Source: Syncephalis fuscata S228 (taxonomy: Eukaryota; Fungi; Zoopagomycota). Taken from it: a stretch of DNA of 64,000 bases. Under the pieces are notes generated by a model that did not search any database, was not told the origin of the DNA, and was given only the letters and a program-made list of their open reading frames with translations. The DNA is taken from NCBI GenBank assembly GCA_025786725.1, contig JAHLTZ010000012.1, positions 248,001 through 312,000 on the forward strand. The letters are read 5' to 3'. Positions 14,673 through 18,517 of this stretch are shown piece by piece. Position numbers and translations under genes: made by a program. Position 1 is the first letter of the stretch; each line of letters begins with the position of its first letter.

Positions 14673-16172
14673 TTACTCGGCATTAAATGCCGGTGGCGCA
14701 TCGGTCGCCTCATTCATTACTTCGTCTTCGTGGCTGCTTGCCCTGTCGCCATTCTCGGCCGACCGGTGCTCGCTACGGCTATGATTGCTAGGCGAGCGAG
14801 AGCCACGACGTGGGGAAGGAGAGCGCGAGTCACGACGGCGTGTTGCTATCGGTGAACGAGATCGAGAGCGGGAATGGCGCCGGGGGGATGGCGAGCGGCT
14901 ACGTACAGGTGAGCGAGAGTAGCGACGGACGGGTGAACGAGAGTGGCGGCGAACGGGTGAACGGGAATAGCGGCGAACGGGCGAACGCGAGTAGCGACGC
15001 ACAGGTGATCTAGAACTACTACGGCCACGACCGCCATAACCTCTACCACGATCATCATCGCGGCGACGGCCATAACGTCGAGGGGACCGAGATCGGGATC
15101 GGGAATAATAGCGGCCACGCGAACGTGAACGTGAACGTGAGCGGGACCGACTCCTAGTGACAAATAAATTATTATTGTTAATTAATTATTAATTAGATTA
15201 CTCATCCGACCCCATAATTATAATAGCCGTTTATAATTAATAATATTTACCTGTAACGACGACGTGGTGAACGCCCACCGCCTCGTCGACTCGATCGTCC
15301 TTCGCGGTCACGCATTTCGTGCGGCGCTATTAATAACACATAACGTCAAGACCGATAATCTACTAACCATATGCCAGCTATTGCCATTGCAACTTACTTT
15401 TACGAGCACCTTTGGCCCATTCAACTGTCAATGTGCGGCCATTCAAATCAAAATTCTCCATCTTATCATAGGCAGCATTCGCATCGCGTTCCTCGTGAAA
15501 TCTAAATAAATAACAACATCCAGGCTAAGGACATTAAATGCTAATACTAAACACACAACAGCATATTTGCTTATCGTTCAACAATAAACTCTAATTGTTC
15601 TATTCACTTCCCCTCCCATCTCTCCACTTAATGCATGCTACTACATCGCAATATATCAACTATTGCGTAAAAGGCAGCATACAACCCAAGTGAGGATACA
15701 CAGTGCCTTGGCGATCCCACTTGTTTTGTAGCCTGCACTGAGCTTGTTATACCGCGCTGATACTTGTCAACCACCATTAACGCAGCGCTTGCCCATCGCT
15801 TTATGCTGTTAGTCTTTAACGCACTCTCGCACTACTTGAAGGATACTGGATATAGGCGAATCCGCGAATTTCTTTTGAGTAGTAATCTTTGGGCAAATAC
15901 ACTATAGAATAAAGATAGATAGAAGTAGAAATATACAAAGAAAGTGCAGCGTGAATTACGCAGTGTTAGACTGACTAGCACTATAATAGCGTAGTGTATA
16001 TACCGCGTACCATCCTTGATCTTTCCATGTTTCTCAAAGGCTTTCTCCAGATCCTCGGCTCTATTACAGCAGGTAAATCATCGGCTGTGTTGTCTGTACC
16101 GCGCTATTTACCTAGTAGATTTGTCGAGATTGCCTACATAAATAGAGGGACATTGCCCTCTCCGCGCGGCAT
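14673..16172 (-). CDS. SR splicing factor, single RRM plus RS domain (SRSF10/SRSF12/SCL-like)
   Basis: Spliced RRM SIYVGNLDKSTRAEDLEKAFEKHGKIKDVYLPKDYYSKEIRGFAYIQFHEERDA..VEWAKGARK, followed by RS/RSP repeats. ATG 16172 needs a 1-nt correction to be in frame. Confidence 0.9.
14906..15001 (-). repeat. Coding 24-nt tandem repeat, (RR[Y/H]SRSPV)x4
   Basis: Seen in the translation of ORF 14673..15002. Confidence 0.85.
15502..15846 (-). other. Putative U12-type (minor spliceosome) GT-AG intron, 345 nt
   Basis: 5'ss GTATCCTTC; branch-like TCCTTAGC at 15531-15524, ~22 nt from the AG; phase 2 within the Q codon of RGFAYIQ|F. Confidence 0.8.
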
Positions 16173-16629
16173 CTTGTGTCCGTGATTCTCCAGTAAGATG
16201 TAAACGCGTCAAACACCTATTGTAGCCGTGTCTACACTTGTGGGGAAACCGATAAAACAGCACAAAGGATAAACAAAAGTCTAAGCCACTGTGGACAGAT
16301 GCAGCACGTAGAAAGAAAAAAGTAAAACTGATTAATTTAGGGTGTACTTGATGTTAATAACCTCTACAAATCAACTAAATGGCCATTTGTCAGCGGTCGC
16401 AAGTTTAAAAGCACCACGTCTAAAACTGCGTTATTTCTTTGCTTCACTACGTCACTACTGCCTAGTTTGTTGTTTAAGTCGTTCTTTCCTCTGCTTCCTA
16501 TCACTAGCACTGCTGCATATCAGTCTATTGCCGGCACCATAACCAAGTGACTACCACAACGAGCCATAACTATCGATTTTTTCTATATATCGTTTAGACC
16601 TTGGTCGATTAAAGGATAAAAACGTAGGC

Positions 16630-18517
16630 ATGGTGTTGTTATATTCGCGTTATTCCGCTGGGGTGTTACTAGGCCATGGTGCAAAGTACCAGCGTGCCAC
16701 TTCTTCCTTTTCTTCAATACGTTCCTTGCTAACCACGCGTTTTATATATTGTGTCAGTAGTAAACGTGCCATAAACACGACGATATCTACGCGTTTAACA
16801 AGCAACAGCGATAGCAACACAAGTATCATGTCAGCATCAACTGATAACCAACCAAAGATCCTTAAGTGGGCCTCCAAGGATGGCGAATTCCGTCGACAGC
16901 AATCCAGCTTCCGTGATTTCGTATCAAAGGACCCAAATGCAAAATTTGTAGCCGAAAAGTAAGCTATTTAGTGTTAGAGAATAAGCTAAACTACTTACTA
17001 CTACCATTGAAATGATTATTTATTACAATAGAGATCGCTATCATCTTTATGTGAGCTATGCTTGTCCATGGGCCCATCGTACACTTATTGTACGAGCTCT
17101 AAAGAACTTGGACTCAATCATTAGTGTATCAGTAGTTGATGTAAGTAATAAATACCTATAAATACCTATAAACGACTATAGATAACAGTAATTAATCTAT
17201 TTATTTGCTTATCTATTCTATGTTAGTATCTATTGCAAGATAAAGGCTGGAAGTTTACTGATCCATCCGAGACACCAGGTGCCACGTTAGATCCTATCAA
17301 TAACGCACAATATCTGCGTGAAATCTACTTTAAAGCCAATCCTGAATACTGCGGTATGTTGTATTATAAAACTGATGTTACTTAACTAATAATTGATACA
17401 TATATGTGTGTGTGTGTGTGTGTGTATATAATAGATCGCTTTACTGTACCAGTACTATGGGACAAAAAAACAGAAACCATTGGTAGGTTGTAGCATAGTT
17501 AGCAAATATAATTATCCAATTAACAATATACATTGTTTTAATAGTTAGCAATGAAAGCTCCGAAATTATTCGCATGTTAAATACTGAATTTAACGAACTT
17601 GTTTCGGAAAAGTGTGAGGTTGATCTTTATCCAAAGGAACTGCAATCACAAATCGATGAGATGAATACGTGGATCTATGATACTGGTAATTAGATCATTG
17701 TAGTCTTAATTCAACTAACAACCTATCATATCTTTAGTTAATAATGGTGTATACAAGGTTAGCCATTAATAATATTAAGCACTATTAATACAAACGCAAT
17801 ACTAATACCAATACTATTTACTGTTACTAATAGTGTGGATTTGCTACTACCCAAGAAGCTTGTACGTATATAATAGCATTATATATTCCTATTACTATTC
17901 TATTCATATCTAACTATATATTTATATTAGATGAAAATAATTGTGGACCATTATTCAAGTCACTCGATAGAATTGAAGACATTTTATCCAAAAATAAATT
18001 TTTATTGGGCACTCAACTGACCGAGGCTGATGTTCGTCTTTGGACTACTATTATTCGGTAGGATATAATAGACTAGATGATTGTTTGTTACTGACCTATT
18101 TATTGCTATGTTCACTATTTAGATTTGACCCCGTCTATCATGGTCATTTCAAGTGTAATGTAAAGTCAATTGAAAAGGACTATCCACACACTCTTCGTTG
18201 GGCCCGTCTAATCTATCAATTACCTAAAGGTAAGCTAACTAGTCACTTATTTATTAATACGTCCATTAATATTTCCACAACGCATATTAATACACCCCAT
18301 GTTTTGTATAGTGGCCGAGACTGTGAATATGACGCATATCAAACGCCATTATTATATGAGCCATCTCCAGATCAATCCTACCGGCGTGGTACCACTCGGC
18401 AATGGCCCAGGTAAGTGAAATAGTGCCACATGAATAGACACGTTGAACTAACACGATATCAACACGGCACGGGTTTGTGTTATGTTACAAGATCTATCGG
18501 CACCTATCGGCAACTAA
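16630..18517 (+). CDS. ECM4: Omega-like glutathione transferase / glutathionyl-hydroquinone reductase (Ecm4/YqjG family)
   Basis: [12 protein letters not shown]; [18 protein letters not shown]; [10 protein letters not shown]; [16 protein letters not shown]; [13 protein letters not shown]; [25 protein letters not shown]; second in-frame ATG at 16828. Confidence 0.92.

What the first reader, a model, noticed from the sequence alone, without database searches (positions are those of the whole stretch)
15595..15815. Candidate poison exon / competing splice sites inside the U12 intron (SR autoregulatory switch)
Seen on the minus strand within the intron: GACTAACAG (branch plus AG, ~15814-15806), a second U12-like donor GTATCCTCA at 15699, a pyrimidine-led acceptor TGCCTTTTACGCAATAG ending 15660, and a GA-rich tract GTGGAGAGATGGGAGGGGAAGTGAA (~15627-15603). 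Intron read-through hits TAA within ~10 codons. Established: SR genes autoregulate through unproductive splicing, and SRSF10 uses major/minor splice-site competition with a GA-rich element. Inference: a fungal equivalent that couples SR levels to minor-spliceosome activity. I do not know of this being described in fungi.
Basis: partly seen in the sequence, partly recalled or inferred. Interest (0 to 1): 0.8.

Follow-up and report, generated by a model that had tools for sequence, protein, structure and literature searches.

The report
CAAG-rich retained minor intron, fungal SRSF10
The fungal counterpart of the splicing regulator SRSF10 often keeps one rare-type intron unspliced, and that intron carries a cluster of CAAG words shared with distant fungi and with invertebrate animals, which points to a very old self-limiting switch that works by retention rather than by the hidden exon first proposed.

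Summary
The four motifs exist at the stated places, but one RNA run shows only the canonical junction 15501/15847 plus an unbroken contig through the intron; no junction uses 15805, 15699 or 15660, and seven neighbouring major introns have no such contig. The branch-plus-AG, the acceptor and the GA tract are absent from seven Glomeromycota orthologues; the second donor lacks the +8 T that this genome's minor donors need. Two chytrids keep it in major-type introns, so coupling to the minor spliceosome is optional. Best reading: SRSF10 binds CAAG and blocks removal of its own weak minor intron, exposing a stop after 10 codons. Binding, feedback and decay are inferred. The scan had noted the intron itself (s1-634636) but no CAAG element.

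The parts
16112..16172 (-). Coding exon 1 of the SRSF10/SCL-like gene (ATG at 16172); the assembly lacks one base at 16145/16146 that the RNA has
16011..16060 (-). Exon 2 (RRM)
   Evidence: junctions
15847..15901 (-). Exon 3 (RRM, ends in RGFAYIQ, two bases into the codon)
15502..15846 (-). GT-AG minor (U12-type) intron, 345 nt; both spliced and unspliced forms present in RNA
15839..15846 (-). Used minor donor GTATCCTT
15707..15838 (-). CAAG cluster, six copies starting 15838, 15791, 15766, 15746, 15723, 15710; candidate SRSF10-binding element, the conserved feature
15816..15818 (-). In-frame TAA reached after 10 codons in any RNA that keeps the start of the intron
15806..15814 (-).
15691..15699 (-). 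Second minor-like donor with C at +8, 8 nt after the last CAAG; unused in the RNA; possible decoy or relic of the animal exon-3 minor donor
15672..15740 (-). Predicted local hairpin whose 3' arm holds the second donor (z -3.35, window chosen after the fact)
15660..15676 (-).
15603..15627 (-).
15524..15531 (-). Non-canonical minor branch motif TCCTTAGC, 22 nt from the acceptor (median 14.5 nt in other candidate minor introns here)
15398..15501 (-). Exon 4 (second half of RRM; Pfam RRM_1 positions 46-70, E 0.015)
15251..15326 (-). Exon 5
   Evidence: junction 15326/15398; 3' end from the sequence
14673..15153 (-). Exon 6, RS domain and stop codon
   Evidence: its acceptor is read from the sequence, not from an RNA junction

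Best explanation
The single SRSF10/SCL-type gene of this early-diverging fungus is limited by regulated retention of its ancestral minor intron. Shown: the intron is minor-type and spliced at its canonical ends; it is the only one of eight checked introns whose unspliced form assembles; retention gives a stop after 10 codons, inside the RRM; the intron is about five times longer than other minor introns here, has a weak and distant branch, and carries a CAAG cluster that is conserved as a word in fungal and invertebrate orthologues. Inferred: the SRSF10 protein binds the CAAG repeats, which begin at +9 of the donor (and abut the branch motif in Glomeromycota), hinders minor-spliceosome assembly, and so diverts its own message to an unproductive form that is held in the nucleus or decayed. 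Low minor-spliceosome activity would push the same way.
For: (canonical junction; one unbroken 405-nt contig 15472-15876; depth bins fully explained by exon-only contigs for seven major introns). (CAAG first of 256 4-mers over seven fungal lineages, z 13.7; window intron 6 vs 1.74 expected, P 0.0025, rank 3). (30 CAAG in 1094 nt of the minor intron vs 7 in 3160 nt of the other introns of the same Glomeromycota genes; 0 in the window gene's other four introns). (2 CAAG in 2054 nt of other candidate minor introns, median 71 nt). (0 CAAG in the stretch holding the long intron of the SRSF7-like paralogue). (CAAG ranks 1-3 in six of ten long invertebrate SRSF10 minor introns). (such clusters occur about once per 100 kb). 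Precedents: PMC7244321, PMC4379411, PMC4598772.
Against: One run, one study, contigs only; 30 exon bases on each side of the intron contig, one short of the tool's bridging rule; depths cannot give a true share. Minor introns are often spliced slowly, and no other minor intron could be laid as a control. CAAG is not the published SRSF10 motif (AGAGAV, AAAGACAAA; PMC8522700). In the mouse minigene, loss of SRSF10 raises retention (PMC7244321), the opposite direction. CAAG is weak in Rhizophagus and Funneliformis (P 0.05-0.07), not enriched in four invertebrate introns, and absent from two short orthologous introns (L010, L062). No close relative of this fungus was available.
Confidence: 0.5

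Rival explanations
1. The CAAG block works as an enhancer for the donor just behind it: SR binding shifts splicing from 15846 to 15699 (147-nt extension with the early stop), or the second site is a U11-binding decoy. Retention is what results when the switch stalls.
For: Second donor is rarer than chance and lies 8 nt after the last CAAG. The same order, CAAG block then imperfect minor donor, is seen in invertebrate loci L037 and L050; mammalian exon 3 has a rarely used minor donor (PMC7244321); Gonapodya has a strong major donor behind its CAAG block.
Against: No 15700/15501 junction. Donors without T at +8 show no excess next to a branch motif in this genome (6 vs 11 control; with T 42 vs 5). 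The site is predicted paired. None of seven Glomeromycota introns has a second donor.
Confidence: 0.15
2. One reading: a cassette poison exon or nested major intron using the AG at 15806 or 15660 competes with the minor intron, driven by the GA tract.
For: Motifs are present; exon 15805-15700 would hold five of six CAAG and shift the frame to a stop at codon 47; decay and contig simplification could hide such forms; it is the mammalian design.
Against: No junction; the intron contig is unbroken. The upstream intron would be 41 nt or less, with a minor donor and a branch 3 nt from the AG; the branch is variant in the RNA. Branch, acceptor and GA tract are absent from all seven Glomeromycota introns, which at 141-193 nt leave no room for an exon.
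Confidence: 0.1
3. No feedback: the intron is simply a weak minor intron that is spliced slowly, and the CAAG words bind some other factor or help the minor spliceosome instead of blocking it.
For: Non-canonical branch, long branch-to-AG spacing (22 nt here, 29-42 nt in Glomeromycota); mouse data show SRSF10 loss raising retention; binding untested.
Against: The word follows the SRSF10 gene, not the intron class: it stays when the intron becomes major-type (Gonapodya) and sits in the upstream intron where this one is lost (Cladochytrium); other minor introns lack it.
Confidence: 0.19
4. RNA structure: the GA tract and its flank pair with bases +3 to +18 of the intron and hide the used donor, causing retention.
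For: Pair probabilities 0.55-0.95 in three of four folds.
Against: Long-range; lost with a 150-nt span limit; whole-intron z -1.43; no consensus structure in orthologues.
Confidence: 0.06

Closest known systems
Mammalian SRSF10 minor-intron autoregulation (Meinke et al. 2020, PMC7244321)
   Same: Orthologous gene; minor intron at the codon position seen in invertebrate SRSF10 loci; stop shortly after the minor donor; repeated purine-rich word inside the intron; an unused second minor donor behind it.
   Different: GT-AG, 345 nt; no evidence of a competing major donor or an included exon 3; unproductive form is retention; the conserved word is CAAG; protein binding untested.
SRSF5/srp2 intron retention coupled to NMD in fungi (Lareau and Brenner 2015, PMC4379411)
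   Same: Animal poison-exon intron corresponds to an unusually long retained intron in fungi.
   Different: Another SR subfamily and a major intron; that intron's sequence was reported as not notably conserved, whereas here a word is conserved across fungi and invertebrates; NMD shown there, not here.
Arabidopsis SCL33 autoregulation through intronic GAAG repeats (reviewed in PMC4598772)
   Same: Sister subfamily; repeated xAAG words in a long RRM intron. The Brachypodium SCL intron fetched here has 14 GAAG and 7 CAAG.
   Different: Major intron at another codon; GAAG dominates; alternative splice sites are used.
USSE elements of SNRNP48 and RNPC3 (PMC8329584)
   Same: A minor-donor-like site not used for splicing.
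   Different: USSE is a conserved tandem of perfect sites that activates an upstream major acceptor; here one imperfect, unconserved site.

Membership tests
U12-type intron | RTATCCTT donor used as the splice site | tested here: met
U12-type intron | CCTTRAC-like branch close to the acceptor | tested here: inconclusive
   TCCTTAGC, 22 nt from the AG; orthologues have TCCTTGAC at 29-42 nt
U12-type intron | Minor snRNAs in the genome | tested here: met
   U11 47.5 bits and U6atac 37.8 bits over cut-off; U12 34.6 bits below cut-off with the branch-pairing motif visible; U4atac not searched
SRSF10/SCL subfamily | One N-terminal RRM with the YxPxDYY...RGFAY signature, C-terminal RS domain, shared intron positions | tested here: met
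   exon by exon, no tree built
SRSF10-type major/minor competition switch | Productive mRNA needs the minor intron; early stop behind the minor donor | tested here: met
SRSF10-type major/minor competition switch | Competing downstream major donor joined to an internal major acceptor (exon 3 inclusion) | tested here: not met
   no junction (rare forms can be lost); no room in orthologues
SRSF10-type major/minor competition switch | Conserved enhancer inside the intron | tested here: inconclusive
   GA tract not conserved; CAAG cluster conserved as a word; enhancer function not shown
SRSF10-type major/minor competition switch | Splicing responds to the level of SRSF10 | not testable with these tools
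   needs knock-down or overexpression
SR unproductive splicing by intron retention (srp2 type) | Long intron with early stop selectively kept in RNA whose other introns are removed | tested here: met
   one run, contigs
SR unproductive splicing by intron retention (srp2 type) | Retained form stabilised when NMD is lost | not testable with these tools
   no such data set
USSE | Conserved tandem of perfect minor donors | tested here: not met
   single site, C at +8, absent from Glomeromycota
Intron-hosted non-coding RNA | Match to an Rfam family or conserved structure | tested here: not met

The most novel reading that the evidence does not exclude
A CAAG-based SRSF10 feedback element already sat in this minor intron in the common ancestor of animals and fungi; animals read it out as a poison exon, this fungus and Glomeromycota as minor-intron retention (here with a relic of the second minor donor), and chytrids carried it into major introns after the minor intron was converted or lost. 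CAAG would then be the natural autoregulatory word of the SRSF10/SCL line.
Probability: 0.4. Interest if true: 0.72.

Novelty: new variant of a known kind. Interest (0 to 1): 0.57.

Why it matters
It would be a second case, after SRSF5, of an unproductive splicing event shared by animals and fungi, and one where the cis-acting word and a minor intron are conserved too. It gives a concrete candidate in vivo motif for SRSF10 orthologues and a natural series (minor intron, converted intron, lost intron) for asking whether the link between SR levels and the minor spliceosome is ancient or optional, in 140-350 nt introns that are easy to dissect.

Tried and rejected
Poison exon via 15806 or 15660 and GA tract as enhancer: rejected on RNA, spacing and conservation. 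Hosted non-coding RNA: no Rfam match, no conserved fold. DNA contamination as the source of the intron contig: other introns and the intergenic stretch have no depth. CAAG as a general feature of minor introns or SR introns: rejected. Word searches with the RS exon and with a relative's exon found no fungal kin, so the large profile search was used once because the verdict depended on relatives. Viral contigs gave only unrelated matches. No orthologue from this fungus's own phylum or from Mucorales was found. A search for fission-yeast srp1 autoregulation returned nothing. Loci L035 and L075 encode a peptide that I recall as the vertebrate one and may be human: after the first listing they were left out of every comparison.

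Full report
Gene and intron. The minus strand at 16172-14673 holds a six-exon gene for an SR protein of about 275 residues with one RRM and an RS tail. It is the only gene of its kind in the 29.4 Mb genome. One public run, judged RNA because its contigs skip introns and leave intergenic DNA empty, confirms the junctions 16060/16112, 15901/16011, 15501/15847 and 15326/15398, and supplies one base missing from the assembly at 16145/16146 that restores the frame from the ATG. The third intron, 15846-15502, starts GTATCCTT, has a TCCTTAGC branch-like motif and ends AG. The genome has U11, U6atac and a below-threshold U12 with the expected pairing motifs. A pattern for RGFAY[IV][QE] followed by a minor donor found 94 metagenome loci, mostly invertebrate SRSF10 genes with an AT-AC intron at the same codon and phase.

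All are present as described. Against shuffles and window tiles only the second donor is mildly unusual (P 0.005 and 0.023); the others range from 0.01 to 0.30 and were chosen after the fact. The proposed branch A lies 3 nt from its AG, while CTAAC sits 26-28 nt from the AG in confirmed major introns nearby, the intron upstream of it could be at most 41 nt, and the RNA contig carries a C>T change inside the motif. The second donor has C at +8. In this genome RTATCCTT followed by a branch motif occurs 42 times against 5 in the control, whereas the same pattern with any other base at +8 occurs 6 times against 11, so working minor donors here keep the T. The site is also predicted to lie in a hairpin arm.

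RNA evidence. No junction uses 15805, 15699 or 15659. Besides the canonical junction there is one unbroken 405-nt contig, 15472-15876, through the whole intron. Depth bins are exactly accounted for by exon-only contigs across introns 1, 2, 4 and 5 of this gene, two introns of the gene downstream and one of the gene upstream, so this is the only one of eight introns whose unspliced form assembled (my arithmetic on table 2). Contig depths are 468 against 1007 for the junction, which suggests a sizeable minority but is not a measurement. Limits: one run, contigs that drop rare forms, 30 exon bases per side, and no second minor intron laid as a control. Retention or use of the second donor both end in a stop after 10 codons; the 15805-15700 exon would stop at codon 47.

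Conservation. After two word searches failed, a profile of exon pieces and one further search gave fungal orthologues, whose loci were fetched. Seven Glomeromycota genes have the same intron positions in the RRM and a GT-AG minor intron of 141-193 nt at this codon. None has a second donor, a CTAACAG or a comparable purine tract. They do share CAAG words, including an invariant one that abuts the branch motif. Gonapodya has a 474-nt major-type intron at the same codon with 16 CAAG against 3.4 expected; Cladochytrium has lost this intron and carries 12 CAAG against 3.1 in a 459-nt upstream intron. Over seven lineages CAAG is the top 4-mer of 256 (combined z 13.7; the Glomeromycota are related, so this overstates independence). 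The window intron, left out of that sum, has 6 against 1.74 (P 0.0025, rank 3), all within its first 140 nt.

Controls. Other introns of the same Glomeromycota genes: 7 CAAG in 3160 nt against 30 in 1094 nt; the other four introns of the window gene: none. Twenty-seven other candidate minor introns of this genome: median 71 nt, 2 CAAG in 2054 nt (the patterns only reach short introns). The stretch with the long intron of an SRSF7-like gene: none in 656 nt. Six CAAG within 132 nt occur four times in 398 kb. In invertebrate SRSF10 minor introns CAAG ranks first to third in six of ten long introns, in a block that follows a major-type acceptor by eye, and in L037 and L050 an imperfect second minor donor follows the block directly, as in the window. 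That these blocks are the counterpart of mammalian exon 3 is inferred. Two short orthologous introns lack the word. A grass SCL gene has a long intron at another codon rich in GAAG and CAAG.

Mechanism. The word follows the gene, not the intron class, which fits a binding site for the gene's own product. In introns this short there is no room for the mammalian exon, so the simplest outcome is blocked splicing: binding next to the donor (first copy at +9) or the branch hinders assembly on an intron that is already weak, and the early stop removes half the RRM. That SR proteins bound just downstream of a donor repress it is my background knowledge, not tested. Against it: the published SRSF10 motifs are AGAGAV and AAAGACAAA, and in the mouse minigene loss of SRSF10 increases retention.

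Comparison with what is known. It works like the mammalian SRSF10 circuit and like srp2 retention in fungi, but fails the defining test of the former, a competing major intron. Six paper searches on SRSF10 or SCL showed no report of SRSF10 autoregulation in fungi or of a CAAG element; the pan-eukaryotic minor-intron survey cites SRSF10 only in its references. The library lacks most subscription papers. Verdict: new variant of a known kind, interest 0.57.

Operator rules. The spliced model was searched exon by exon and the joined search left out. Loci L035 and L075 may be human and were excluded.

Noticed in passing
window 16145-16146: The assembly lacks one base that the RNA contig has; without it exon 1 of the SR gene is out of frame. 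Assembly error or allele.
   Followed up: partly
L106 2056-2529 (Gonapodya): Major-type intron at the same codon with a weak upstream donor, 16 CAAG and a strong GTAAGT donor 63 nt before the acceptor; the public protein model stops inside this intron. Candidate alternative-donor version of the switch.
   Followed up: partly
L105 704-1162 (Cladochytrium): Orthologous intron lost; the CAAG block lies in the upstream intron, with an ATATCCTA motif near its end.
   Followed up: partly
L098-L107 (Glomeromycota): Branch motif 29-42 nt from the AG with a pyrimidine tract between, long for a minor intron; several public protein models mis-splice this intron (P0168-P0170).
   Followed up: partly
L164 (G000 contig C339), SRSF7-like gene: Intron of about 530 nt with repeated CTGC/GCTC words and no CAAG; likely that gene's own regulatory intron.
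   Followed up: partly
L155 806-1514 (Brachypodium SCL): 709-nt intron at another codon with 14 GAAG and 7 CAAG.
   Followed up: partly
L062 and L050: Orthologous minor introns that appear to end AT-AA and AT-AG.
   Followed up: no
window 16455-16760: Contigs of the opposite-strand GST gene reach to 16455, about 240 nt from the 5' end of the SR gene contig at 16219: a compact divergent promoter.
   Followed up: no
G000 C35 and C140; C13 and C109: Identical RRM-protein hits on two contigs each, suggesting duplicated or haplotype contigs in the assembly.
   Followed up: no
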